In this document: positions 11,130-59,916 of the stretch, piece by piece
How the letters are laid out: each line of letters opens with the position of its first letter
Position numbering within the stretch: the stretch's first letter is position 1
From: Euprymna scolopes
Taxonomy: Eukaryota
Assembly (NCBI GenBank): GCA_053919585.1
Contig: CM132795.1
Direction: 5' to 3' (one strand)
DNA length: 64,000 nucleotides
Notes under the pieces: model-generated
What the model saw: only the letters and a program-made list of their open reading frames with translations
Told to the model about the DNA's origin: nothing
Databases searched by the model: none
Translations under genes and position numbers: made by a program

Positions 11130-11230
11130 CTAATCCGATGAACCGATGGACTTTTTCTCCTCGCTCACTGTTCGGCGTTCCGAGGAGGACGAAGAGGAGG
11201 AAGAAGAAGTAGTAGTAGTAGTAGTTATTC
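11130..11230 (-). CDS. NF60: Terminal coding exon (NF60-type C-terminus)
   Basis: Not in the ORF track. Acceptor acatatttcAG|GA (phase 1, G|GA = Gly). Encodes ITTTTTTSSSSSSSSSERRTVSEEKKSIGSSD then TAG at 11130-11132, resembling the recalled squid NF60 C-terminus. Confidence 0.88.
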
Positions 11231-12702: not shown

Positions 12703-12812
12703 CACCTGTGGCTTCATAGCCGCCCTCCGACCTGGTCAGTATCGTAGACAGCACCTCTGCCTCGTTAGGTCTGGCTCCGACAACTTGTTCCACTATCTGC
12801 TTCATCCCAATT
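12703..12812 (-). CDS. NF60/NF70: Short alternative tail exon (NF60/NF70-type)
   Basis: Not in the ORF track. Acceptor gttgccaacAG|A (phase 2, AG|A = Arg) and donor G|GTGCGT (phase 1). 110 nt, encoding IGMKQIVEQVVGARPNEAEVLSTILTRSEGGYEATG, which matches my recollection of the start of the squid NF60/NF70 tail. Confidence 0.9.
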
Positions 12813-14951: not shown

Positions 14952-16316
14952 ACTTGCTACCAAAATATAAAAATATAAACGTACATATACAACATAGTTA
15001 CATATTTGTATGTTTACTCATACATATAGATAAATATGTGTACAAAATAAACGTCATATTCCTGATGTCGTACTGATGTATTGCAATTATATTTAAATAT
15101 CCCTATCAATCAATCTTTGTCTCTCTATCGATGCATCTATCATTCGATCTCTATATACAATGAGTTATTTGAAGACTAGCTCATGTAAAGGCACCAAAAA
15201 TAAAACGTACAGTAAAATAATAAGAAAACATTGTATTTGAGGTGAAATACATAGTTACTTTACTAATCAGATAAATGTTGAGCGAACGTGTAATTTTTTT
15301 ATTAATTAATTGCAAAATTATAAATACAACTATTTGTATTCTGACATTGAAAACTTTTTGACGCCATTTTATCATGAACTGATAATTAACTAAGCTCAGT
15401 TTAACGAGATGTAGAAATACTTAGGTTCCTATTAAATAAGTTATAAATAATAATAGAATACATAAACCATCAGAAAATAGTAATATTATGAATATATTTA
15501 CCAATTGCATGGCTATTTACATACCCTCGTTTTTTATCTTGTTATTATGATTGTTTTACTGAGGAGCAGCTAATGTGTTATATTAATTTCACAACACACA
15601 CAACACACACGCATATTTATGTATATATAAGCGATTTATCTAATTATCTAGTCATTTTAATACATTTTATTACATATAAGGATAAAAAACCGTATTAAAT
15701 CCACCAAAAGCATAATCTAAAGTTCCTTATTTGAATATTATAATCGTTTAAATATAAAATATGATTAATCACGAAAGCAAGTAGAGTGATTAAGGCAAAA
15801 TAAAATTGATTTGGGTTTTATCAGAAATTAGTGAAACGTGTTATTGTCTTTTTTATGAGCAACTTGTAACCTCACGTGTTCCAACATCTACGCTGATACA
15901 AATACATAAAAATACGAATACAGCACAAAAAATTGCAGCACCAAAAAAATTAAAAAAAAAACAAAAATTCACAACCAAAGAGAAATAAACAAAAAAAAAA
16001 CTGATTATGCTTCGTTTTTCCTAAATTAAAATTATTTTATGTAAATTATTAAGAGCGCGAAGCTCAAAGTACCTATTAGTGTGCGAAACATTGCCGCCTA
16101 TCCTTGTGTTATGATGAAGGTGCACGGCAGAAAAGCAAGTAAAATAATAAAATAAAAACGTCAATATACTTCACACAAAAGAGATGAAAAAATAAAAAAA
16201 GAAACAATAAACATTGAGAATTTTGCGGGATTCAATGGGGGTATGTGCAAGCGAGAGCAAAACTTGAGAAAATAGCCATGCAAACAAAAAACCTTTCGAT
16301 GCTTTTAATAATCTTC

Positions 16317-19300
16317 TTATACAGTGAAAGCTGGATGCATTTCCAATAGTTTAAACATACCACCCTCCCCATCTGATCTCCTACTTGTAGATAGTTTGGA
16401 TGATTCGCTCGTTTCGGACTTCTCGGAACCTGAAGACTTTAAGGATGTTTTAGTAAATACATCACTTTTGCTTGTAAAGATCTTTGCAGCAGACGATTTC
16501 ATTTCGATCCTGGCATCTGTTGGAACTTCCTTCATCTTTTCTAAGATTTCTTTTTCAAAATTCGATTCGATAGATTTAAATGAAAACCCATCATTAGCTG
16601 TAGCTGCGTCGTCATCGGACAGCTTTTGATTCTTAATTATCTTCATGCTACTTGTGTCGTTAAAGAAATCTTCATGGTTGACACCATTGGTAAGCTGCGA
16701 GACAATTGACTTCGCCAAAAACTTAGTACTCTTACTGCTAGTCTTATGTTCAGAGAGATGAAATTCTTCAACTTCAGTGGCAGTTGACGAATCCTGAACG
16801 CCGTTGTATTCGATATGTCTATTGTTCGACAACTGAGATATCTTAACGCACCCAGTACTCTTCTGCGAGTCAAATGGTGAAGATGAGTCAATGATGTCAA
16901 GATCAGATGGACGATAATCACCATTATTATCGTGATCGCCATTTCTCGAAGACACTGGGAATTTACTAGAATCAGGCGAGCTGGCCTGCCTTTCTGACTC
17001 ATCTTTTTCAGAAAATACAGGGGATTTATCTGATTTGCCATTTTCAGAAGTTACTGGGAACTTACTAGAGCGTGTCGACTTTCCAAAGTTTTCTTGCACA
17101 TCTTTTATCTTAGAAGATTCTAATGTTAAGGATAACTCAGAAGAGTTTTTTAATATTACTGCAGACTTAGCAAAATCTTCTGATTCAGCTTCTTGGTAAA
17201 GTATCGGAAACTTAGCCGATTCTGATGTTTTATGGGACCTAACTGTGTCTTCTCGTTCAACTTCTATGGAAGTCACTAAAGATTTAAAACCTTTTGAAGT
17301 TATTGGAGATTTAGCGGAGGTATCTGAAGAGAGCGAGAATTTAGCATGGTCCAATGTTACTGGAGATTTAGTTAAGGTTTTAGATTCACCTTCTTCGGAA
17401 GATACAGGAGCTTCTGATATTACAGGTGACTGGACGGGCTTTTTTGATTCAGCTTTTTTGGAATGTATGGGGGACTTAGGTAAGTCTGATCTTACTGTAG
17501 ACTGGGCGGATTTTTCTGATTGCGTTTTTTCCGAAATATCAGCAGACATTGCCGGTTTTGATGTAACTGAGGATTGTGTAGATTTTTCGAATTGCAGTTT
17601 TTCAGTAAGTACAGTGGATTTAAATTGTTCTAATGTTACTTGAGATTGGACGGACTTTTCTAATTCGGCTATGTCAGAAGTTACCTGCAACTTGGCCGGA
17701 TCCGATACCATTGAATATCTAGTGAGATTTACAGACTCATCTTTCTCAAAAGGCACAGATGTCTTAGAATGTTTATATGTTATTGAGGATTTAGCACTAT
17801 CTGATTCATACTTTTCGGAATATTTTGCAATCTGAGACGTTTCTGAATTTACTAGGGATTGAATCGACATGTCGGATACAGCTTTTTCATGTGATAGAGA
17901 GAACTGAGACGGTTCTAAGAGTACCGGGGACTTTGCGGACTTTTCTGATTCAGCTTTTTCAGAAGCTACAGGAGATTTAGCGTGTTCGGAAGTTACTGGG
18001 GATTTAACCGACTTTTCTGATTCAGCTTTTTCAGAAGCTACAGGAGATTTAGCCGGTTCTGAAGTTACTGGGGATTTAGTGGGCCTTTCTGATTCAGCCT
18101 TTTCAGAAGCTATGGGGGATTGTGCCGGTTCTGAAGTTACCGGAGATTTAGTGGACTTTTCTGATTCAGCTCTTTCAGAAGCTACGGAAGATTTAGCCGG
18201 TTCTGAAGTTATAGGGGATGTTACGGACTTATCTGATTCAGCTTTCTCAGAAGCTACCGGGGATCGAGCGTGTTCAGAAGTTACTGGGGATTTAGCGGAC
18301 TTTTCTGATTCAGCTTTTTCAGAAGCTATCGGGGATTGAGCCGGTTCTGAAGTTACCGGAGATTTAACGGATTTATCTGATTCAGCTTTTTCATAAGCTA
18401 CGGGGAATTGAGCGGATTCCGAAGTTACCGGAGATTTAGCGGACTTTTCTGATTCAGCTTTTTCAGAGGTTACCGGGGATTGAGCCGGTTCTGAAGTTAC
18501 TGGGGATTTAGCAGACTTTTCAGATTCAGCTTTTTCAGAAGCTACAGGGGATTGAGACGGTTCTGAAGTTACCGGAAATTTATCGGACTTTTCTGATTCA
18601 GCTTTTTCAGAAGCTACAGGGGATTTAACCGGTTCTGAAGTTACTGGGGATTTAGAAGACTTTTCAGATTCAGCTTTTTCAGAACCTACAGGGGATTGAG
18701 ACGGTTCTGAAGTTACTGGGGATTTAGCGGACTTTTCAGATTCAGCTTTTTCGGAGGTTACCGGGAATTGAGCTGGTTCTGAAGTTACCGGAGATTTAGC
18801 CGACTTTTCTGATTCAGCTTTTTCGGAGGTTACCGGGGATTGAGCCGGTTCTGAAGTTATCGGGGATTTATCGGATTTTTCTGATTCAGACCTTCCGGAA
18901 GCTACGGGGGATTGAGCCGGTTCTGAAGTTACCGGAGATTTAGCGGACTTTTCAGATTCAGCTTTTTCAGAAGCTACAGGGGATCGTGCGTGTTCTGAAG
19001 TTACCGGGGATTTAGCGGACTTTTGTGATTCAGGTTTTTCAGATGTTACCGGGGATTGAGCCGGTTCTGAAGTTATCGGGGATTTAGCAGACTTTTCAGA
19101 TTCAGCTCTTTCAGAAGCTACCGGGGATTGAGCCGTTTCTGAAGTTACCGGAGATTTAGCGGACTTTTCAGATTCAGCTTTTTCAGAAGCTACAGGGGAT
19201 TGAACCGGTTCTGAAGTTACTGGTGATTTAGCGGACTTTTCTGATTCAGCTTTTTCAGAGGTTACCGGGGATTGAACCGGTTCTGAAGTTATCGGGAATT

Positions 19301-22300
19301 TAGCGGACATTTCTGATTCAGCTTTTTCAGAAGCTACCGGGGATTGAGCTGGTTCTGAAGTTACTGGGGATTTAGCGGACTTTTCAGATTCAGCTTTTTC
19401 AGAAGCTACCGGGGATTGAGCCGGTTCTGAAGTTACTGGGGATTTAGCAGACTTTTCTGATTCAGCTTTTTCAGAGGCTACGGGGGATTGAGACGGTTCT
19501 GAAGTTACTGGGGATTTAGTGGACTTTTCAGATTCAGCTTTTTCGGAGGTTACCGGGGATTGAGCCGGTTCTGAAGTTATCGGAGATTTAGCGGACTTTT
19601 CTGATTCAGCACTTCCGGAAGCTACGGGGGATTGAGCCGGTTCTGAAGTTACCGGAGATTTAGCGGACTTTTCAGATTCAGCTTTTTCAGAAGCTACAGG
19701 GGATCGTGCGTGTTCTGAAGTTACCGGGGATTTAGCGGATTTTTGTGATTCAGCTTTTTCAGATGTTACCGGGGATTGAGCCGGTTCTGAAGTTATCGGG
19801 GATTTAGCAGACTTTTCAGATTCAGCTCTTTCAGAAGCTACCGGGGATTGAGCCGTTTCTGAAGTTACCGGAGATTTAGCGGACTTTTCAGATTCAGCTT
19901 TTTCAGAAGCTACAGGGGATTGAACCGGTTCTGAAGTTACTGGTGATTTAGCGGACTTTTCTGATTCAGCTTTTTCAGAGGTTACCGGGGATTGAACCGG
20001 TTCTGAAGTTATCGGGAATTTAGCGGACATTTCTGATTCAGCTTTTTCAGAAGCTACCGGGGATTGAGCTGGTTCTGAAGTTACTGGGGATTTAGCGGAC
20101 TTTTCTGATTCAGCTTTTTCAGAAGCTACAGGGGATTGAACCGGTTCTGAAGTTACTGGGGATTTAGCGGACTTTTCAGATTCAGCTTTTTCAGAAGCTA
20201 CCGGGGATTGAGCCGGTTCTGAAGTTACTGGGGATTTAGCAGACTTTTCTGATTCAGCTTTTTCAGAGGCTACGGGGGATTGAGACGGTTCTGAAGTTAC
20301 TGGGGATTTAGTGGACTTTTCAGATTCAGCTTTTTCGGAGGTTACCGGGAATTGAGCTGGTTCTGAAGTTACCGGAGATTTAGCCGACTTTTCTGATTCA
20401 GCTTTTTCGGAGGTTACCGGGGATTGAGCCGGTTCTGAAGTTATCGGAGATTTAGCGGACTTTTCTGATTCAGCACTTCCAGAAGCTACGGGGGATTGAG
20501 CCGGTTCTGAAGTTACCGGAGATTTAGCGGACTTTTCAGATTCAGCTTTTTCAGAAGCTACAGGGGATCGTGCGTGTTCTGAAGTTACCGGGGATTTAGC
20601 GGATTTTTGTGATTCAGCTTTTTCAGATGTTACCGGGGATTGAGCCGGTTCTGAAGTTATCGGGGATTTAGCAGACTTTTCAGATTCAGCTCTTTCAGAA
20701 GCTACCGGGGATTGAGCCGTTTCTGAAGTTACCGGAGATTTAGCGGACTTTTCAGATTCAGCTTTTTCAGAAGCTACAGGGGATTGAACCGGTTCTGAAG
20801 TTACTGGAAATTTAGCGGTCTTTTCTGATTCAGCTTTTTCAGAGGTTACCGGGGATTGAGCTGGTTCTGAAGTTATCGGGGATTTAGCGGACTTTTCTGA
20901 TTCAGCTTTTTCAGAAGCTACCGGGGATTGAGCTGGTTCTGAAGTTACTGGGGATTTAGCGGACTTTTCTGATTCAGCTTTTTCGGAGGTTACCGGGGAT
21001 TGAGCTGGTTCTGAAGTTACTGGGGATTTAGCAGACTTTTCTGATTCAGGTCTTTTGGAGGTTAACGGGGATTGAGCTGGTTCTGAAGTTACTGGGGATT
21101 TAGCGGACTTTTCTGATTCAGCTTTTTCAGAAGCTACGGGTGATTGAGCCGAATCTGAAGTTACCGGAGATTTAGCGGACTTTTCAGATTCAGCTTTTTC
21201 AGAAGCTACAGGGGATAGTGCGTGTTCTGAAGTTTCCGCGGATTTAGCGGACTTTTGTGATTCAGCTTTTTCAGAGGTTAGCGGGGATTGAGCCGGTTCT
21301 GAAGTTATCGGGGATTTAGCGGACTTTTCTGATTCAGCTCTTTCAGAAGCTACCGGGGATTGAGCCGTTTCTGAAGTTACCGGAGATTTAGCGGACTTTT
21401 CTGATTCAGCTTTTTCAGAACCTACAGGGGATTGAACCTGTTCTGAAGTTACTGGTGATTTAGCGGACTTTTCTGATTCAGCTTTTTCAGAGGTTACCGG
21501 GGATTGAGCTGGTTCTGAAGTTATCGGGGATTTAGCGGACTTTTCTGATTCAGCTCTTTCAGAAGCTACAGGGGATTGAACCGGTTCTGAAGTTACCGGA
21601 GATTTAGCGGTTTTTTCTGATTCGGCTTTTTCAGAAGCTATTGGGGATCGTGCGTGTTCTGAAGTTACTGGGGATTTAGCGGACTTTTCTGATTCAGCTC
21701 TTTCAGAGGTTACCGGGGATTTAGCCGGTTCTGAAGTTACCGGGGATTTATCGGACTTTTGGGATTCAGCTTTTTCAGAAACTACGGGGGATTGAGCCGG
21801 TTCTGAAATTAACGGAGATTTAGCGGACTTTTCTGATTCGGCTTTTTCAGAAGCTACGGGGGATTGAGCCGGTTCTGAAGTTACTGGGGATTTAGCGGAC
21901 TTTTCTGATTCAGCTTTTTCAGAAGCTACAGGGGATTGAACCGGTTCTGAAGTTACTGGGAATTTAGCAGACTTTTCAGATTCAGCTTTTTCAGAAGCTA
22001 CGGGGGATTGAGACGGTTCTGAAGTTACCGAAGATTTAGCGGACTTTTCAGATTCAGCTTTTTCAGAAGCTATAGGGGATTGAACCGGTTCTGAAGTTAC
22101 TGGGGATTTAGCGGACTTTTCAGATTCAGGTTTTTCAGACGTTACCGGGGATTGAGCTGGTTCTGAAGTTATCGGGGATTTAGCTGACTTTTGTGATTCA
22201 GCTTTTTCAGAAACTACCTCGGATTGAGCAGGTTCTGAAGTTACCGGGGATGTAGCGTTTTTTTCTGATTCAGCTTTTTCAGAAGCTACGGGGGATTGAG

Positions 22301-25300
22301 ACGGTTCAGAAGTTACCGGAGATTTAGCGGACTTTTCAGATTCAGCTTTTTCAGACGCTACAGGAGATCGTGCGTGTTCTGAAGTTACTGGGGATTTAGC
22401 GGACTGTTCGGATTCAGCTTTTTCAGAGGTTACCGGGGATTGAGCCGGTTCTGAAGTTTTCGGGGATTTAGCGGACTTTTCTGATTCAGCTTTTTCAGAA
22501 GCTACCGGGGATTGAGACGGTTCTGAAGTCACCGGAGATTTAGCGGACTTTTCAGAATTAGTTTTTACAGAAGCTACCGGGGATTGAGCCGGTTCTGAAG
22601 TTATCGGGGATTTAGCGGACTTTTCTGATTCAGCTTTTTCAGAAGTTGTCGGGGATTGAACCGGTTCTGAAGTTATCGGGGAGGTAGCGGACTTTTCTGA
22701 TTCAGAATTTTCAGAAACTGCGGGGGATTGAGGCGGCTCTGAAGTTACCGGAGATTTAGTGGACTTTTCAGCATTAGTTTTTTCAGAAGCTACAGGGGAT
22801 CGAGCGTGTTCTAAAGTTACCGGAGATTTAGCGAATTTTTCTAATTCAGCTTTTTCAGAGCCTACGCGTGACCTAACTAGTTCTAGATTTACTCGATAGT
22901 TAGCGGACAATTCTGATTCAGCTTTTTCAGAAACTACGTTAGACTTAGCTTGTTCTGACGTTACTGGTGATGTATTGGACTTTTCTGTTTCAGCATCCTC
23001 GGGAGTTAAAGGCGACTTTGAAGTTTCTGATAGTACTGCAGACTGTATATTTTTTTCCGGTTTAGCAAGTTCGCAAAGTATTGGGGAATTCGGATGTCTC
23101 GCTGTTTGTGGAGATTTAGCTGCTGTTTCTGATTCAACTTTTTCGATGTCTATAGGGGGCATAGAACTCTCTGTTCTTACTTGGGACTTAGCATTTTTTT
23201 CTAATTCACCTTTTTCGGAAAAAACTGGAGACTTAGCCGGTTTTGGTGATACTTGTGATTTAGATGGTTTTTCTGATTCAAATATTTTCGAGGTTATAGT
23301 GGATTTCGAACCCTCTGGTGTTAGTTGGAACTTAGCAGATGTTTCTGACTCGGCTTTTCTCGATGTTACAGGGTACTTAGCAGATTCTTCTATTAATGGA
23401 GACTTAGCAGATTTTTTGGATTCAGCTTTTTGGGAAGTTATCGGGGACTTTGAACACTTTTTGGATTCGGCCTGTTCTGAAGGATCAGGAGATTTTCTTT
23501 TTTCAGCATGTATTGTAGGGGACTTTTGTTTTTCGGAAGTTGTTAGTGATATTCTTGATATTGATAGTGATACTTCTGGTTTCAATACGGCCTGCCTTTC
23601 TGTCGGCAGAGAATACACATCATGTTGTGAAGTGATAAGAGATATTGTGGCTTTTTCACTGGCCACTTTCTCTTTGGATAGAGAGTAATTACCTTCATAT
23701 GTTGTTCCAGGTGACTTGGCCGTTTGTTTATATTCTTCCTTCTCTGTGGGAACTGGTGACTTGGATTTTTCCGATTCAACTTTTTCAGGTATCTCAGGAG
23801 ATTTAACAGAATGTTCTTGACTCTTGTCACTTTCAGATGCAACAGGAGACTTAGCAGATTTTTCTGATTCAGCCTTTTCAGAAGGTACCGGAGACTTAGC
23901 AGATTTTTCTGATTCAGCCTTTTCAGAAGGTACCGGAGACTTAGCAGACGTTTCTGATTCAGCCTTTTCTGAAGGAACCGGAGACTTAGCAGATTTTTCT
24001 GATTCAGCCTTTTCAGAAGGTACCGGAGACTTAGAAGTTTCTGGTGTTGCTGGAGACTTGGCAGATTTTTCTGATTCAGCCTTTTCTGAGGGTACTGGAG
24101 ATTTAGCAGGTTCTGATATTACAGGAGACTCAGCAGATTTTTCTGATTCAGCCTTTTCCGAAGCGACCGGAGACTTTTCAGGTTCAGATGCTACAGGAGA
24201 TTTAGTAGATTTTTCTGATTCCGCCTTATCCGAAGGAACTGGAGATTTTGCAGGTTCTGATATTGCTGGAGACTTAGCAGATTTTTCTGATTCAGTTTTT
24301 TCTGAAGGTACAGGGGATTTTGCAGGTTCCGATGGTACGGGGGACTTAGCAGATTTTTCTGATTCAGCCTTTTCGGATGGTACAGGGGATTTAGCAGGTT
24401 CAGATGGTACGGGGGACTTATCAGATTTTTCTGATTCAGCTTTTTCTGAAGGTACAGGAGATTTTGCAGGTTCCGATGGTACGGGAGACTTTGCGGATTT
24501 TTCTGATTCAGCCTTTTCAGATGGAACTGGTGATTTAGCAGGTTCCGATGGTACGGGGGACTTCGCGGATTTTTCTGATTCAGCTTTTTCAGATGAAACT
24601 GGTGATTTAGCAGGTTCTGATGGTACGGGGGACTTATCAGATTTTTCTGATTCAGTTTTTTCTGAAGGTACAGGGGATTTAGCAGGTTCAGGTGGTACGG
24701 GGGACTTATCGGATTTTTCTGATTCATCCTTTTCGGATGGTACAGGGGATTTAGCAGGTTCAGATGGTACGGGGGACTTATCAAACTTTTCTGATTCAGC
24801 TTTTTCTGAAGTTACAGGAGATTTAGCAGGTTCCGATGGTACGGGAGACTTTACGGATTTTTCTGATTCAGCCTTTTCGGATGGTGCAGGGGATTTAGCA
24901 GGTTCCGATGGTACGGGGGACTTAGCAGATTTTTCTGATTCAGCCTTTTCGGATGGTGCAGGGGATTTAGCAGGTTCAGATGGTATAGGTGACTTAGCGG
25001 ATTTTTCTGATTCAGCTTTTTCAGAGGGTACTGGGCTTCGAGCAGGAGACTTAGTTGATTGTTCTGACTCTGCTTTCTCGGATGTCATAGGAGACTTTGC
25101 CGATTTTTCGGATTCAGCTTTTTCAGATGTCATAGGAGACGTAGCTGATTTTTCAGATTCGGCTTTTTCAGAAGGCACTGGAGATTTATCATGTTCTGAT
25201 TTTACTGACTCAGCTTTTTCAGAACCTTTATACGATTTTTCAGATTCTGCTTTCTCTGTTGTAACTGGAGATTTCACAGTAGGAGATTCGAGCTCCGACT

Positions 25301-26433
25301 TATCACTTTCAGATTTTACTGGTGATAATTCTTGAGATTTTTCAGACTGGTCCTTTGTAGAAGTTACCGGGGATTTTGCTGGTTCCATAATAGTGGGAGG
25401 TTTTGCTGTAGGTGATGCGGTGCGTTCAGCGTGTATTGGGGATGTTGCAGATTTTTCTGAAGCAGTTGGTGATACAGAGGCATGGGACATTGCGGTTGAA
25501 TGAACAGATTTTTCTGAAAGACCAGGGGATAACGCTCGCTCAGAAGGAACTGGTGATTTTGCTTTCGATCCGGCAGATTTCTCGGATACAGGAGACTTTT
25601 CGACTTCTGATCCAATAGGTGAGGCCGCTTTCTCAAGAGGAGAGGTCTCAGCACCAGATTTAACTGAAGAAACGGGAGAAATTGCAGGTTCGGAAATTAC
25701 AGGGGATTTGATGGTGCCAGAAAGTGTTTCGCTAGGGGCACATTGCAGTGACATGGCGCGTTCAAGCACTACTGATTGTGTTACCTTTTCTTCTTTGACA
25801 AGAGCTGCATCAGCCTCATCCCCATCTTCGGCTCCAGGAGATTTTAGTGACTTGTCTTGTTCGGATTCAGCAGGGGATTTAGCTGATTTTACAGAATCGG
25901 CTTTATCGGATTCTGAAGGAGTTGTAGCTTTGACCGATTCCGCCCTGTCAGATTCAGCCTTTTCAGATTCTTCTCTCTCAGATTCAGCTTTGTCAGATCC
26001 AACATCTTGCGATGTTTGCCTATCATCTTCATCAATCTCAGACTCCGTCTGGTCGTTGTCTTTTTCCTCCTCATCTTCGTCGTTGTCATCGTGATCTTTA
26101 CGCTGAGTTGATTTTAATTTTTCCTCGGATTTCAATACTGATTCCTCCCTGACTTCTTCAAGTCCGGTGCCAGTATCTGCATCCGAGTCTGCTCGGGTTT
26201 CCTCAGCTTCAGCTTCGGTATGCGTGTCTGAATCGGAGTCTTTGCCTTCGTCGTCAGCCTCATCATCTCCACCGTAGCTGTCAGCTACGACTTCGGGGCT
26301 AGTAGATTTCGCACGTACCGTGCCATCTTTTGAACTGTCGTCATCACTTGCTGCTTTTCCATTGGTTTTTATTAGTTCCGGTCTATAGGCTTCTCTGGTC
26401 CGAATCGTCATAGGCAAATGCACAAGCTCGATC
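16317..26433 (-). CDS. NF220: Giant alternative tail exon of the high-molecular-weight neurofilament (NF220-like): acidic segment followed by Lys-Ser-Pro/Gln-Ser-Pro repeat arrays
   Basis: The 3391-aa ORF in the track really begins at the acceptor tctccctcctgcAG|G at 26433. Its phase 2 completes AG|G = Arg, giving EGEESR-IELVHLPMTIRTREAYRP. The frame is open for 3371 codons to TAA at 16317-16319, with an alternative phase-1 donor G|GTATGT at 16361/16360. The sequence is dominated by SEKAESEKSAKSPV(P/T)SEPA(K/Q)SPV(A/T/P) units. Confidence 0.92.
17920..22790 (-). repeat. Coding minisatellite array 2: ~65-70 copies of a 72-bp (24-aa) unit, consensus SEKAESEKSAKSPVTSEPAQSPVA
   Basis: 72-nt periodicity is visible directly, e.g. 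the recurring gattcagctttttcagaagctac...ggttctgaagttac. Copy number estimated as length/72. Confidence 0.95.
23830..25280 (-). repeat. Coding minisatellite array 1: 72-bp units SEKAESEKSAKSPVPSEPAKSPVP plus 45-bp (15-aa) units SEKAESEKSAKSPVP
   Basis: Seen in the translation and the DNA. The 45-bp units lie at ~23830-24030 and ~25020-25190. Confidence 0.93.
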
Positions 26434-28992
26434 CTGCAGGAGGGAGATAAATATCTTTGTCCATCCACCCACGTATAACACAATAGCCCCATAAAAAGGG
26501 TACATCAATAGAAGCAGTAAAGAATTGCTTTAATTAGCTTAGGGGAAATCTTAAAAGGGGCAAATTTTCACCTTACCCATATCTCAGTAGGCACAATAAA
26601 CATAAATGAAAAGAGTTAGATGCAGTTCTTTTCGAATTGTTAAAATAGCAGACGGCAGAAAGGCAGCAGTAACGTTAAATGTTACTTTTCAGAGAAAAAC
26701 TCATGGTGAATTCTAAGTACTTTCAAATGAAAAATGTTTTCTAGTTTAAGAAATGATTTGCAATTTAATTAGCTCGATGTGTTGCCATTGTTCAATGAAA
26801 CTAAAGTTTTTTTTAAACTGTTTTGTTGCATTTAAAATTTCTTACTTTTTTTTTTTACATTTAACAGAAGACAAAGTGCTATTATAAAATTGTGCGGATT
26901 TCGATTAAATAATATCAAGTATTTGTAGAAATGTGAATATAACACCCACGAAGACATTTTTATATTGATTTATATGTTTTATGTGTTATTTTAAGATGTT
27001 TGGGTGGAGAGACCCATATTTATATGAACATTTTATTTTATAAATGAAAATAGAATATAAATAAAAAGATCGAATTAAAAAATAGAATCATTCTAAACAC
27101 ATAAGAATGTAGTTGTTTCACGTTTGGTTAAAGGGCATAGTCAGCATNNNNNNNNNNNNNNNNNNNNNNNNNNNNNNNNNNNNNNNNNNNNNNNNNNNNN
27201 NNNNNNNNNNNNNNNNNNNNNNNNNNNNNNNNNNNNNNNNNNNNNNNNNNNNNNNNNNNNNNNNNNNNNNNNNNNNNNNNNNNNNNNNNNNNNNNNNNNN
27301 NNNNNNNNNACGCCACAAAAAATAACGATAAAAGAAACACATTTGTATAAAACTCGTGTATGGATTTATAGCAATAGAGTAGAGAGTTTAATGGCGAGTA
27401 ATGTTTAACTGATGAACATAAGTAAATTATCTATTATGGTATTAATAATATTAGCACACACTCCAAGATGAGTAATTATTATCATTTATATTATTTCATT
27501 TATTGTCCTAAATTGTTGTCATATTCAAAGTGTTTCGACCGTTTCACTCTTCCGCCTTCTACAGATGCCGGTTTTCTTTTTTTATGAAAGTTCATGTTCC
27601 ATGATTTTTAAATATCTAGTATTAGTTTATTTTGTTTCATTCTTTCATTATGAATATTTTTTTAAAAATTTAGGTAAAATTTTTCTTTGGTCAATATAAT
27701 GTATAATACTAACAATATATACATTAAATATTAAATTAAATTAAATATTAGATATTACATATTAAAAAAGTCGTGGTATGGAAATAATCAGTCTTAAGAA
27801 GATAACGGCCGAAACCCCACGAAGATTCAAGGCATGTATAACAGTGTTAAACATGCAAATAATATCTATAATAAAAGAAAGTGTTTGTAAAATATATGCA
27901 TAAATGAAACAATGAAATGTTATGTAAAGCAATTCTCGTCGATAATACGTCATTTTAGTAAAGCGTTCCATCTACAAGCAAGGTGAAATAAAACATCAGA
28001 ACTCAATGTACACTAAAAAATGTTGATAAATATAAGATAAGAATATACAACATTATTGTGAGGATATTATCTGATGTTATTATATTACAACAATTCAATT
28101 AAATCTAACGTTTATGATGAGTTGAATACTTTCATCTTCTTTTGAGGATGCTCTCCGTTTTAAACTTTCAGAAGATAATTATATTTTCTAATCGATCGAA
28201 GCTAAATGTATATTCATAAATTTAAAGTAAAATCGCAATTTTTCTGTATTCCTTATTTCCTCTTTTCTGTGAACAATTCTTGTAATTCTTTTGCTTCATA
28301 CAGATGGTCAGATTTAATAAACATTCGTGTTCTGTTGGTTTATTTATGTCTTTTTTAAAGTCTTACATTCTAATTTATTATTACACTGAAATATGCAACA
28401 TTTTTACTTTACGCAAAAGCAGAAAAAAATTGTCGCTCTAATTTCATATCGATTACGATCTTTTATTAATCATTTCCCCAAAAAGTAATGATGAAACTGT
28501 ACTTTAAAACGCTAATAAGGCATTTAAAAACGCTAATTTGTTTCCTTTGTAATAAAAAGGAAACATCTGGGTCGATTAAAAAAAAACGGTTTACACCATA
28601 ACAACTACTTTATGTGGATATTATGAGAAAAACACAAAACTGTTAGATTATTTATGGAAATATATAGATTTTGTTCATATTTTTTTTCTCAAAATAAACT
28701 ATTCGTTTTCATTTGTACCGGATGTCAATTTAAACCTTATACAAATAAGTAAATAGGAAACAAATTAATTTCTTTTTAAAATGCGTGAATTGGAAGTACT
28801 TTTCAAGTTCAGCTTTTCCAACATGAATTTACAAACACTTATTGTGAATACTTTTATAAAAGTCTTTTTAAGGTACAAAAATATAAAAAAGCACATATTC
28901 TCATTCTATATATGAGGCGCAATTAATCTTTTACAATATTGAAATATTGATACGACATTAAAAAATTGAAGTAAATAAAAGTATATTCAAAG

Positions 28993-39161: not shown

Positions 39162-39382
39162 CTGCTTTCTTCACCTTCTAACAATTTTCTGTAGGCAGCA
39201 ATTTCCAATTCTAGGGACAATTTGATGTCCATCAAATCCTGGAGCTCCTTGAGAATGCTTTCCATTTCACCACGAAGTTTGGTTATTTCTTCTTTGTACT
39301 GGCAGCTCTCAAGTTCATTCTGTCTGTCCTTTTCTTCCAGTTCGCGCAACAAATCTTGATTGGTTCTTTCTAATTGAGCATT
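39162..39382 (-). CDS. NF60/NF70/NF220: Neurofilament rod exon ending with the IF helix-termination motif
   Basis: tttttttAG| acceptor, AG|GTAAGA donor. 221 nt, phase 0-2, NAQLERTNQDLL...LMDIKLSLELEIAAYRKLLEGEES(R), the canonical intermediate-filament signature. Confidence 0.97.
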
Positions 39383-40459: not shown

Positions 40460-40585
40460 CCTGGCTTCCAAATCTGCAAGACGGTTACGCACTTCGGTCA
40501 TATTGCTCTTCAATTTAATAGTTTCTTCCTTATTACGTGTAACTTCCATATTTTGTTTAGTCGCTCCTGTACGGAATTCTTGAAC
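40460..40585 (-). CDS. NF60/NF70/NF220: Neurofilament rod exon (coil 2)
   Basis: ttttgcAG| acceptor, |GTATGT donor. 126 nt, phase 0-0, VQEFRTGATKQNMEVTRNKEETIKLKSNMTEVRNRLADLEAR. Confidence 0.95.
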
Positions 40586-41810: not shown

Positions 41811-41972
41811 CTTAAGATTGTAGTAAGCCTCGATATCGCCTCTCATCTGATCACATTTAGCGTCATACTCTTGTTGGATGTCACGGATTGCCTGGGCCAG
41901 TTCGTTTCTCCAGAACTCACGGTTTTCGGCAGTTGTGTCGCGATAAGCCAATGCAGCGAGTTCTTTCAGTTC
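41811..41972 (-). CDS. NF60/NF70/NF220: Neurofilament rod exon (linker L12 / coil 2a)
   Basis: cttcatAG| acceptor, |GTGAGA donor. 162 nt, phase 0-0, ELKELAALAYRDTTAENREFWRNELAQAIRDIQQEYDAKCDQMRGDIEAYYNLK. Confidence 0.95.
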
Positions 41973-42577
41973 CTATGAAGGAAAAGACAAAACATGTACT
42001 CAATCAGTAAAGTTCGTTACGATTCTATCTCGAAAGCATAGTGATTTAAGTTGGAAAAATTTTAGAAAAAAGAATTGATCGGCCAATGTAAACATTTAAG
42101 TACAAACAATGCCATTGTTTTTTCGCGTGTGTTTCTTCATTGTGTTTATTATTCTCTCATTATTCAGAAGAGAGAGAGACATTCTACTTTTAAAAGGTGC
42201 AATTAAATTACAAAACAGTTGATTAGTATTCACAAATTACTTAACAACATTTTTGTTAAAAATGCTACATGACGTCATGATTGTTTATAATGAATTTATA
42301 TAATTATATGCTGTTAGTTAAATAATTAATTTATTTATTTTTAAATAGAATTTACTCAACAGGCGTGTGTTTACTTATATAATCAAGTAAGAATAATAAC
42401 ATTGCAGTCAAGGGATTNNNNNNNNNNNNNNNNNNNNNNNNNNNNNNNNNNNNNNNNNNNNNNNNNNNNNNNNNNNNNNNNNNNNNNNNNNNNNNNNNNN
42501 NNNNNNNNNNNNNNNNNNNNNNNNNNNNNNNNNNNNNNNNNNNNNNNNNNNNNNNNNNNNNNNNNNNNNNNACTCAC

Positions 42578-42673
42578 TTGGGCATGCACGTCTTTCTGGA
42601 ATTCAAGTTCTTCCTCAAGTGTTTGTCTACGGTTTTCCGCATCCAAATGATTAATCGTCTCGTTATTCAAGTC
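42578..42673 (-). CDS. NF60/NF70/NF220: Neurofilament rod exon (end of coil 1b)
   Basis: tttcAG| acceptor, |GTGAGT donor. 96 nt, phase 0-0, DLNNETINHLDAENRRQTLEEELEFQKDVHAQ (IF motif LEEELEF). Confidence 0.95.
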
Positions 42674-59729: not shown

Positions 59730-59916
59730 CATTCTCAGTTTTTCGAGTTCGTCATTCATCTTGGCTAGGATGTTAGATTGTCTCATTTTTTCCTTCTCGA
59801 GCGATTCAATGGATCTGCGGAGCATACTGATCTCGCCTTCCAAGTCAGCAAGCTGCTGATTCTGCCTAGCGATTTGTTCTTGGTCGATTTGGTGGTATTG
59901 ACGGCTTTCTTCGAGG
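59730..59916 (-). CDS. NF60/NF70/NF220: Neurofilament/intermediate filament gene, rod exon (coil 1b including the lamin-like 42-residue extension); first exon visible in the window
   Basis: Acceptor ttttacAG| at 59917-59918 and donor |GTAAGT at 59729. 187 nt = 1 nt + 62 codons (LEESRQYHQIDQEQIARQNQQLADLEGEISMLRRSIESLEKEKMRQSNILAKMNDELEKLRM), with coiled-coil heptads. Recognised from memory as near-identical to the squid neurofilament rod. Confidence 0.95.

What the first reader, a model, noticed from the sequence alone, without database searches (positions are those of the whole stretch)
16317..26433. Exceptionally long neurofilament side-arm: ~3,350-aa tail from a single >10-kb exon
Seen: 3371 uninterrupted codons after the acceptor, despite heavy repeat turnover. 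Adding head and rod gives roughly 3,800 aa (~400 kDa, my estimate). From memory, squid NF220 is about 1,200 aa and mammalian NF-H about 1,000 aa, so this tail would be several times longer. Inference: a lineage-specific expansion of the phosphorylatable polymer-brush domain, which could set filament spacing and axon calibre in unmyelinated cephalopod axons.
Basis: partly seen in the sequence, partly recalled or inferred. Interest (0 to 1): 0.75.

Follow-up and report, generated by a model that had tools for sequence, protein, structure and literature searches.

The report
Giant neurofilament tail exon, expressed
A cephalopod-type nerve-cell filament gene carries one highly expressed 10-kb exon that encodes a roughly 3,360-residue, serine-proline-rich flexible tail, which would give a filament subunit of about 400 kDa, several times larger than the textbook ones.

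Summary
On the minus strand, 3,371 codons run without a stop from the acceptor at 26433 to the stop at 16319-16317; the other five frames have 75-430 stops. The exon follows five intermediate-filament rod exons, and its phase fits the last one (ends 39162).

It encodes a 354-kDa, acidic, disordered chain with 118 KSP and 199 SP sites. It is built on a 24-residue unit, SEKAESEKSAKSPVTSEPAQSPVA: about 71 copies in one array and 15 in another, with no indels.

Small RNA runs hold as much of the exon as the best DNA-type run. In one run, contig depth falls from 1,718 to 12 at the acceptor.

One correction: a donor (G|GTATGT, exon end 16361) lies 42 nt before the stop and is conserved in a relative. 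It fits a downstream terminal exon (11230-11130) and a 110-nt alternative exon (12812-12703), so this is probably a 10,073-nt cassette, not a terminal exon.

Not shown: "lineage-specific", "several times longer than squid NF-220" and the axon-calibre role. Protein searches found one relative, a 211-residue fragment. The same scan flagged this stretch in three other notes.

It is a new, very long member of the squid NF-220 kind. Interest is moderate.

The parts
16361..26433 (-). Giant tail exon as probably spliced (10,073 nt). It runs from the acceptor AG at 26435-26434 to the donor G|GTATGT (GT at 16360-16359).
   Evidence: Searches give the sequence. One search shows the phase fits the terminal exon. 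One search shows the RNA contig depth step at 26437. One search shows the donor is identical in relative L001.
16317..16360 (-). Read-through end if the donor is not used: 14 codons (the first, GGT, starts at exon base 16361), reading GMFKLLEMHPAFTV, then stop TAA at 16319-16317.
   Evidence: In relative L001 this frame stops two codons after the matching glycine, so the peptide is not conserved although the DNA is 89% identical.
16304..16309 (-). ATTAAA hexamer followed by a GU-rich stretch. It is a possible alternative poly(A) site just after the stop.
   Evidence: The aligned position in L001 reads AATAAA. Its use was not tested.
25173..26432 (-). Non-repetitive acidic start of the tail (about 420 aa; IELVHLPMTIRTRE..., with D/E-rich stretches).
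   Evidence: residues 1-200 have 64 D+E and 28 K+R, and all 31-mers here are unique. RNA contigs cover it.
23831..25172 (-). Array 1. It has 45-bp units (SEKAESEKSAKSPVP) and 72-bp units (SEKAESEKSAKSPVPSEPAKSPVP); both SP sites are KSP.
   Evidence: TRF (72 bp x 14.6, 45 bp x 4.5 and x 2.9, 0% indels); translation.
22995..23830 (-). Degenerate, decayed repeats between the arrays. The frame is kept and many SP sites are lost.
   Evidence: 0 stops in the coding frame against 12 and 24 in the others.
17905..22994 (-). Array 2: 70.7 copies of a 72-bp unit, consensus SEKAESEKSAKSPVTSEPAQSPVA (one KSP and one QSP per unit).
   Evidence: 86% matches, 0% indels; 66 in-register units, diversity by codon position 0.100/0.086/0.201; higher-order blocks of 10-12 units at 18.6-20.9 kb.
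16362..17904 (-). Degenerate repeats followed by the unique C-terminal region.
   Evidence: The last roughly 230 aa are 46-54% identical to P0001 from another species.
16527..16580 (-). Most conserved block of the C-terminal region (SIESNFEKEILEKMKEVP). It is the most confidently predicted helix in an otherwise disordered model.
   Evidence: invariant columns; helix at residues 161-178, pLDDT 58-69; mean pLDDT 45.8.
39162..39382 (-). Last rod exon (end of coil 2B, ...YRKLLEGEES + AG). Donor GT at 39161-39160.
   Evidence: One search gives the sequence. Pfam Filament E=8.9e-14 at profile positions 242-313 of 313. PDB vimentin 1gk4 E=4.3e-12 and lamin A/C.
40460..40585 (-). Rod exon D (42 aa).
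   Evidence: AG/GT boundaries read; open frame.
41811..41972 (-). Rod exon C (54 aa).
   Evidence: Pfam Filament E=2.3e-4, below the Pfam cut-off.
42578..42673 (-). Rod exon B (32 aa). The masked N run at 42418-42571 starts just after its donor and is intronic.
59730..59916 (-). Rod exon A (coil 1B part, 62 aa).
   Evidence: Only generic coiled-coil hits in Pfam.
12703..12812 (-). 110-nt alternative tail exon (IGMKQIVEQVVGARPNEAEVLSTILTRSEGGYEATG). It has the same entry and exit phase as the giant exon.
Evidence: Found independently by a phase-aware AG...GT scan: GC 0.55, pyrimidine tract plus AG, donor GTGCGT. Its use in RNA was not tested.
11130..11230 (-). Coding part of the shared terminal exon (G-ITTTTTTSSSSSSSSSERRTVSEEKKSIGSSD, stop TAG at 11132-11130).
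   Evidence: The frame stays open only if exactly one of the two middle exons is included. Its use in RNA was not tested.

Best explanation
This is the alternative heavy tail exon of a cephalopod-type neuronal intermediate-filament (neurofilament) gene with a multi-exon, vimentin/lamin-like rod. It has the same design as squid NF-220, but the repeat region has grown to about 3,360 residues. The last rod exon (ending 39162) splices to 26433. The exon encodes an acidic start, two arrays of a 24-residue unit (SEKAESEKSAKSPV[TP]SEPA[QK]SPV[AP]) and a unique C-terminal region with one conserved short helix. Most likely it then splices from a conserved donor at 16361 to a short shared terminal exon at 11230-11130. 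A 110-nt exon at 12812-12703 would be the mutually exclusive choice that gives a short-tailed subunit. Inferred mechanism: the rod builds the subunit into the 10-nm filament and the tail projects outward as a disordered side-arm. Each unit is near neutral (4 E, 3 K) and has two SP sites. Proline-directed phosphorylation would therefore turn a weakly charged chain (net about -116) into a strongly negative one (about -500 if all 199 SP sites were used). That would swell the side-arm and widen the space each filament claims. Shown here: the ORF, the repeat anatomy, selection on the peptide, phase-compatible splice sites, high RNA abundance and the acceptor boundary. Inferred: the junction partners, donor use, phosphorylation and any effect on spacing or calibre.
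For: The ORF and its frame are unique: 0 stops against 75-430 in the other frames, including in the non-repeat parts. Five rod exons lie upstream on the same strand. The last rod exon ends ...GAAAGCAG|GT and the giant exon starts with one base that completes AGG.

RNA evidence: oligo-dT RNA runs of only 143-281 million letters hold 0.65-0.67 of the sampled words of the 10-kb exon, the same as the best DNA-type run at 0.65. The holders come from 9 studies. Unique sequence makes up only 36% of the exon, so at least about half of the array words must be present in RNA.

In run X4 the exon contig (25040-26437) has depth 1,717.7 and the overlapping intron contig (26408-27115) has depth 11.7. The exon contig stops 4 nt past the acceptor. 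That is exactly the GCAG suffix shared by the intron end and the last rod exon, as expected if that exon is the splice partner. PolyA run X19 covers exon pieces only.

The peptide is under selection. Diversity among 66 units is 0.100/0.086/0.201 at codon positions 1/2/3, with no indels in about 85 units. Against relative L001 the differences are 26/27/36% by codon position.

Composition: S 22.8, E 14.7, K 12.2, A 10.5, P 10.1%; pI 5.1; 118 KSP and 199 SP. The C-terminal region is predicted disordered except for one conserved helix.

For the donor model: GGTG|GTATGTT is identical in L001, while the read-through frame is not conserved. The phase fits the terminal exon, and the 110-nt exon shares that phase.
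Against: No read or contig was seen to span the rod-to-tail junction or the 16361-to-11230 junction; the only reads call covered 25040-27140. In oligo-dT run X1 a single contig runs from the exon through the intron, so unspliced RNA or DNA is present there. All laid runs are contigs, so internal splicing inside the arrays cannot be excluded. About one third of the sampled words are in no run; this may reflect repeat multiplicity, polymorphism or local assembly error. A conserved ATTAAA/AATAAA plus GU-rich site just after the stop, and the unspliced L001 contig, fit terminal-exon use at least some of the time. No homology to squid NF-220 could be shown. Head and coil 1A are outside the window. 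The species is not known.
Confidence: 0.78

Rival explanations
1. The exon is real, but its length in this assembly is wrong: the 72-bp arrays were over- or under-assembled, so the true tail is substantially shorter or longer.
For: 6.4 kb of the exon is tandem 72-bp repeat, and only 43% of the 31-mers in array 2 are unique. No run holds more than 0.67 of the sampled words. Contigs from X3 and X19 differ from the window by two letters in one repeat unit near 24961-24990.
Against: Units differ by about 14% on average. The longest blocks at or above 97% identity are 617 and 534 bp, and there is no perfect long duplicate, so long reads can anchor uniquely. There are no N runs in the exon. The frame and the 72-bp register hold through about 85 units. 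Contigs from four runs agree with the window at the edge of array 1.
Confidence: 0.1
2. The exon is transcribed, but mature mRNAs remove most of the array through internal cryptic introns, or it is a rare or retained-intron product. The main protein would then have a far shorter tail.
For: Only contigs were available, and they cannot show internal joints in repeats. The X1 contig runs through the upstream intron. PolyA runs X19 and X20 hold only 0.20-0.21 of the words.
Against: Small RNA runs hold as many exon words as the best DNA-type run (0.65-0.67 against 0.65), which requires about half of the array words. Exon depth of 1,718 in a run of 265 million letters shows very high abundance. Selection keeps 10 kb open with third-position-biased variation and no indels, which is unexpected for sequence that is normally spliced out.
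Confidence: 0.08
3. The ORF belongs to a separate gene nested downstream of the filament gene, such as a MAP-like repeat protein, and is not joined to the rod.
For: The junction was not observed directly. An ATG exists at 26492. There is no detectable homology to any neurofilament tail.
Against: RNA depth collapses 147-fold just upstream of 26433, so transcripts do not start at the ATG at 26492; they enter by splicing. The 4-nt overhang of the exon contig matches the GCAG end of the last rod exon (chance about 0.3%; my estimate). Strand and phase fit. No other coding exon was seen between 26.5 and 39.1 kb.
Confidence: 0.04

Closest known systems
Squid NF-220 (Way et al. 1992, PNAS 89:6963; title as cited in PMC4765724) and the squid NF60/NF70 isoforms of the same gene
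   Same: By its title, NF-220 is a high-molecular-weight neurofilament protein with a lamin-like rod and a tail with Lys-Ser-Pro repeats. From my own knowledge, it is made from one gene by alternative RNA processing that also gives short-tailed subunits. Here too there is a multi-exon, vimentin/lamin-like rod, a KSP/SP repeat tail exon and a candidate short alternative exon.
   Different: The tail here is about 3,360 residues (354 kDa) in one exon. No sequence similarity to any database protein of 550-5,900 aa was detected. Orthology is inferred from architecture only.
Vertebrate NF-H and NF-M (type IV intermediate filaments)
   Same: Long, disordered, Glu/Lys/Ser/Pro-rich C-terminal side-arms with tandem KSP phosphorylation sites. 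NF-H has 44-51 KSP repeats (PMC2174004 abstract). They are treated as polymer-brush layers around the filament (PMC11151108 and PMC11626179 abstracts).
   Different: The second half of the rod is split into at least four exons here. Vertebrate type IV genes have only 2-3 introns at their own positions (established knowledge). There are no KSPXK or KSPXXXK motifs: only 2-3 SP sites have K/R at +2 or +3. The tail is about five times longer than the roughly 600-residue NF-H tail (from memory). The resemblance is most likely convergent.
The band above 400 kDa ('HMW') of squid axoplasm neurofilaments
   Same: Pant et al. 1978 (PMC2110134) found that bands at 200 kDa and above 400 kDa carry most of the 32P and co-fractionate with neurofilaments. 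The isoform predicted here would be a serine-phosphorylatable neurofilament protein of about 400 kDa.
   Different: Later papers call the HMW band neurofilament aggregates (PMC3680447). No link between that band and a giant exon has been shown, and the species of this window is unknown.
Giant neuron-specific exons of ankyrins (480-kDa ankyrin-G, 440-kDa ankyrin-B, Drosophila Ank2-XL) and Futsch/MAP1B
   Same: From established knowledge, these are single very large alternative exons that add kilobases of extended or disordered polypeptide to an axonal cytoskeletal protein. Large ankyrin isoforms as axonal linkers are mentioned in PMC7337489.
   Different: The protein family is unrelated, there is no KSP repeat logic, and they attach to membrane or microtubules rather than to a 10-nm filament.

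Membership tests
Cytoplasmic intermediate-filament gene (protostome, lamin-like type) | Conserved end of coil 2B (...YRKLLEGEE) and rod-domain homology | tested here: met
   Pfam PF00038 E=8.9e-14, 52.3 bits against a cut-off of 40, profile positions 242-313 of 313. PDB vimentin E=4.3e-12 and lamin A/C E=3.6e-10.
Cytoplasmic intermediate-filament gene (protostome, lamin-like type) | Long (lamin-type) coil 1B with six extra heptads | tested here: inconclusive
   Exons A and B encode 94 residues of coil 1B. The exon with the head, coil 1A and the start of 1B is not in the window, so the length of 1B cannot be measured.
Cephalopod NF-220-type heavy neurofilament isoform | Tail exon joined in frame to the end of the rod of the same gene | tested here: met
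   The phase fits (AG + G = Arg). There is an RNA depth step at the acceptor, and the 4-nt contig overhang equals the GCAG suffix shared with the last rod exon. The junction itself was not read.
Cephalopod NF-220-type heavy neurofilament isoform | Tandem Lys-Ser-Pro repeats in the tail | tested here: met
   118 KSP and 199 SP; the 24-aa unit has two SP sites.
Cephalopod NF-220-type heavy neurofilament isoform | Sequence homology to the published squid NF-220 tail | not testable with these tools
   Word-index searches in the 171-544, 550-1,750 and 1,854-5,899 aa classes were blank. The exhaustive search with the C-terminal 300 aa found only an unnamed 211-aa fragment. The squid sequence and paper were not available.
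Cephalopod NF-220-type heavy neurofilament isoform | Neuronal expression and heavy phosphorylation in axons | not testable with these tools
   The runs are coded and no tissue is given. High abundance is shown, but not cell type or phosphorylation.
Vertebrate type IV neurofilament (NF-L/M/H) | Type IV gene structure (2-3 introns, none at the positions of other IF genes) and a short coil 1B | tested here: not met
   At least five rod exons lie within the window. The type IV intron pattern is from established knowledge. So this works like NF-H but is not a member.
Vertebrate type IV neurofilament (NF-L/M/H) | KSPXK / KSPXXXK motif classes | tested here: not met
   SP..[KR] occurs 3 times and SP.[KR] 2 times among 199 SP sites. 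The sites are KSPV[TP]SE and QSPVASE.

The most novel reading that the evidence does not exclude
The band above 400 kDa ('HMW') that has co-purified with cephalopod neurofilaments since 1978, and is usually treated as aggregated NF-220, may be the primary translation product of a giant tail exon like this one. Cephalopod neurons would then set side-arm length by choosing between a 110-nt and a 10-kb exon. That would make this the longest known intermediate-filament side-arm and a natural test of how brush length relates to filament spacing and axon calibre.
Probability: 0.2. Interest if true: 0.7.

Novelty: new member of a known kind. Interest (0 to 1): 0.5.

Why it matters
Neurofilament side-arms are the standard example of a phosphorylation-tuned protein brush, and how their length and charge relate to filament spacing and axon calibre is still argued; the mouse NF-H tail deletion had no effect on calibre (PMC2174004). 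A natural subunit with a side-arm about five times longer than NF-H (NF-H tail length from memory), about 200 SP sites and a regular 24-residue unit would be an extreme data point for brush models. Because it sits beside a 110-nt alternative exon, it could also act as a switch between bare and very hairy filaments. It also offers a testable genetic explanation for the neurofilament-associated phosphoprotein above 400 kDa in squid axoplasm. In practice, automatic annotation may miss such exons: no protein of comparable length turned up in three word-index searches, although it is not clear that this genome's proteins are in those collections.

Tried and rejected
- Protein searches. The search for homologous proteins with the tail start scored within the whole exon (1,854-5,899 aa class), with the first 1,000 aa (550-1,750 aa) and with the first 311 aa (171-544 aa) were all blank. 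Low complexity and the length filter limit what these blanks mean.
- Exhaustive search with the C-terminal 300 aa gave one hit only, P0001. Its cluster has one unnamed member from one 987-nt Logan contig.
- A JGI metagenome scan with the C-terminal alignment gave 600 pattern matches and no relative.
- Pfam on tail pieces gave nothing real. The zf-Nse hit (E=1.7e-12, 0 passing stretches) sums repeated weak low-complexity matches, and I rejected it.
- Lamin-tail (Ig-like) or other tail exons: I looked by ORF and GC scans at 1-16 kb and 26.5-39 kb. None was seen apart from the 110-nt and terminal exons.
- Head and coil 1A motif: a six-frame regex scan found none in the window.
- Literature: Way et al. 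1992 is not held. No paper in the library combines octopus, neurofilament, squid and tail domain. The accession SRR8281666 appears in no paper.
- The bacterial promoter/terminator scan is irrelevant to a eukaryotic gene and I ignored it.
- The 'goes back 88' joint reported in all four runs is an artefact of the stretch boundary. The 14 intervening letters are the window's own 25026-25039.
- Species identity could not be settled. Notes by other agents call the genome octopus-like, squid or mollusc.
Full report
OBSERVATION. The feature is on the minus strand. The ORF listing reports one ORF, 16317..26492 (-), of 3,391 aa. Translation shows it is open stop-to-stop for 3,395 codons. The sequence at 26440-26433 reads cctgcag|g, so the acceptor AG is at 26435-26434 and the first exon base is 26433. 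From 26432 there are 3,371 codons to TAA at 16319-16317.

Across 16320-26432 the coding frame has 0 stops, while the other five frames have 75-430 and a longest open stretch of 504 codons. A stop-free repeat unit stays open by itself, so I tested the three non-array parts separately. They cover about 1,227 codons and have 0 stops in frame, against 12-67 in the other minus-strand frames. GC rises from 0.25-0.30 in the flanks to 0.42-0.455 in the exon.

ANATOMY OF THE EXON. It encodes 354 kDa with pI 5.1. Composition is S 22.8, E 14.7, K 12.2, A 10.5 and P 10.1%, with 118 KSP and 199 SP sites. From the 5' end the parts are:
- An acidic non-repetitive start, 25173-26432.
- Array 1, 23831-25172, with 45-bp and 72-bp units.
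- An 836-bp stretch of decayed repeats.
- Array 2, 17905-22994, with 70.7 units of 72 bp at 86% matches and 0% indels.
- More decayed repeats, then a unique C-terminal region.

The consensus of 66 in-register units is SEKAESEKSAKSPVTSEPAQSPVA. The two S-P pairs, the acidic residues and the lysines are nearly invariant. Nucleotide diversity among units is 0.100, 0.086 and 0.201 at codon positions 1, 2 and 3. That pattern, and the absence of any indel in about 85 units, shows selection on the peptide.

Higher-order blocks of 10-12 units exist at 18.6-20.9 kb. The longest near-identical pairs are only 617 bp (98.1%) and 534 bp (97.8%). I therefore see no sign of a pasted duplicate or obvious over-assembly, though only long genomic reads can settle the array length.

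GENE CONTEXT. Five rod exons lie upstream on the same strand: 59916-59730, 42673-42578, 41972-41811, 40585-40460 and 39382-39162. The last one matches the end of the Pfam Filament model (E=8.9e-14) and vimentin/lamin coil 2B in the PDB (E=4.3e-12). It ends ...GAA AGC AG|GTAAGA, so its two spare bases plus G at 26433 make AGG. The frame continues ...LLEGEES-R-IELVHLPM.... The head and coil 1A exon is not in the window, so the total of about 3,800 aa remains an estimate.

EXPRESSION. Twenty public runs from nine studies hold the stretch. Three oligo-dT RNA runs of 143-281 million letters hold 0.56-0.67 of the sampled words, and the best DNA-type run holds 0.65. Only 36% of the exon lies outside the arrays, so about half or more of the array words must be present in RNA.

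I used the single reads call on 25040-27140. In X4 one contig of depth 1,717.7 covers 25040-26437. A second contig of depth 11.7 covers 26408-27115. The two overlap by 30 letters, as expected at a branch in a 31-mer assembly graph. The exon contig runs 4 nt past the acceptor. The intron ends ...CCTGCAG and the last rod exon ends ...AAAGCAG, so spliced and unspliced RNA share exactly GCAG before they diverge. This fits the 39162-to-26433 junction; the chance of exactly a 4-nt shared suffix with an unrelated exon is about 0.3% (my estimate).

PolyA run X19 shows exon pieces only. In X1 one contig runs on through the intron, so unspliced RNA or DNA is present there. All of these are contigs. They cannot show transcript ends, strand or internal joints in the repeats.

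CORRECTION TO 'SINGLE TERMINAL EXON'. At 16361|16360 the sequence is GGTG|GTATGT, a good donor 14 codons before the stop.

The only relative I could find is a 987-nt Logan contig from another species (L001, encoding P0001). It has the same SP repeat type and the same C-terminal region (46-54% identity). It keeps GGTGGTATGTT exactly, but the read-through frame there stops two codons after the aligned glycine.

A phase-aware scan found one convincing 110-nt exon, 12812-12703 (GC 0.55, pyrimidine tract plus AG, GTGCGT donor). A terminal exon at 11230-11130 follows it. Both middle exons have length 2 mod 3. Only the inclusion of exactly one keeps the frame into ...G-ITTTTTTSSSSSSSSSERRTVSEEKKSIGSSD*.

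On the other side, an ATTAAA plus GU-rich element sits 10 nt after the stop and aligns with AATAAA in the relative. The 260 nt after the donor are 74-89% identical between the two species. Use as a terminal exon is therefore also possible. I put donor use at about 0.65. Either way the tail is about 3,360-3,390 residues.

C-TERMINAL REGION. AlphaFold2 on the last 233 residues, with a two-sequence alignment, gives mean pLDDT 45.8. The one helix of moderate confidence, residues 161-178, is the invariant block SIESNFEKEILEKMKE. A conserved element at the far end of a 3,000-residue spacer hints at a binding or cross-bridging end-piece rather than a purely repulsive brush. This is inference.

MECHANISM (inferred). 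Each 24-residue unit has 4 Glu, 3 Lys and 2 SP sites. The unmodified tail has a net charge of about -116 (464 K+R against 580 D+E). Full SP phosphorylation would add roughly -400. The tail would then switch from a weak polyampholyte to a strong polyanion and swell, as proposed for NF-M and NF-H brushes (PMC11151108 and PMC11626179 abstracts). The contour length at 0.38 nm per residue is about 1.3 micrometres. A random-coil estimate gives a size about 2.7 times that of the roughly 600-residue NF-H tail (my calculation; tail length from memory).

The sites are not of the vertebrate KSPXK type, since only 2-3 SP sites have K/R at +2 or +3. Whether such a tail sets axon calibre is open. In mice the NF-H tail is dispensable for calibre (PMC2174004).

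COMPARISON AND NOVELTY. The design is that of squid NF-220: a lamin-like rod with an alternative KSP-repeat tail (title cited). I file this as a new, very long member of that kind, not as a vertebrate type IV neurofilament, because the gene structure and motif class are not met.

'Lineage-specific' is untested. Three word-index searches were blank, the exhaustive search gave one fragment and a metagenome scan gave none. The relative shows that the 24-residue unit and the C-terminus predate the split of the two species.

One link is worth testing. Squid axoplasm has phosphoprotein bands at 200 kDa and above 400 kDa that co-fractionate with neurofilaments (PMC2110134). The upper band is now called HMW aggregates (PMC3680447). 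A 400-kDa primary product would be an alternative explanation.

LIMITS. The species is unknown; other agents' notes say octopus-like, squid or mollusc. No junction was read directly. Array length is not verified by long reads. About one third of the sampled words are in no run, close to the 32% of 31-mer positions that are not unique within the exon, and the cause is not resolved. N runs were left untouched. I translated short joined exon ends only inside a script, to check phase.

Noticed in passing
window 16098-16360 (-) and L001 730-987: About 260 nt after the conserved donor are 74-89% identical between the window and the relative's contig, as high as or higher than the coding C-terminus. 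This could be a conserved intronic splicing control region or an alternative 3' UTR. It includes an ATTAAA/AATAAA hexamer with a GU-rich element.
   Followed up: partly
window 12703-12812 and 11130-11230 (-): There is a 110-nt alternative tail exon and a shared terminal exon that ends in a Thr6-Ser9 run. Skipping both middle exons or including both breaks the frame.
   Followed up: partly
L001 1-3: The relative's contig begins with TAA in the frame of the repeat ORF. This may be a contig-end artefact or a real stop in that species' repeat region.
   Followed up: no
window 26433-26453 and 26838-26859 (run X3, record 5): A 487-nt contig of depth 15 shares only the 21 nt at the acceptor and 22 nt further into the intron. 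It has 416 other letters between them and unrelated sequence where the exon should start. It could be a paralogous locus, a repeat or an intron allele.
   Followed up: no
window 25040-27140 (run X1): In an oligo-dT 'metatranscriptomic' run, one 2,214-nt contig crosses the acceptor into the intron without a break. This differs from X4, which has a 147-fold depth step there. It suggests unspliced RNA, internal priming or DNA in that library.
   Followed up: no
window 24961-24990: Contigs of X3 and X19 read GATGATATAAGT (X3) and GATGAT (X19) where the window has GATGGTATAGGT. This is a small allelic or assembly difference inside one unit of array 1.
   Followed up: partly
window 17905-25172: Array 1 has KSP at both SP sites of the unit. 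Array 2 has KSP plus QSP (54 of 66 units), a systematic K-to-Q change at the second site that may alter kinase recognition.
   Followed up: partly
window, whole: There are eleven masked N runs of 128-184 nt, none in the giant exon; the one at 42418-42571 starts 6 nt after the donor of rod exon B. (TA)n microsatellites are very frequent in the introns. GC-rich patches at 61.7-62.65 and 63.2-63.55 kb show no obvious coding frame.
   Followed up: no
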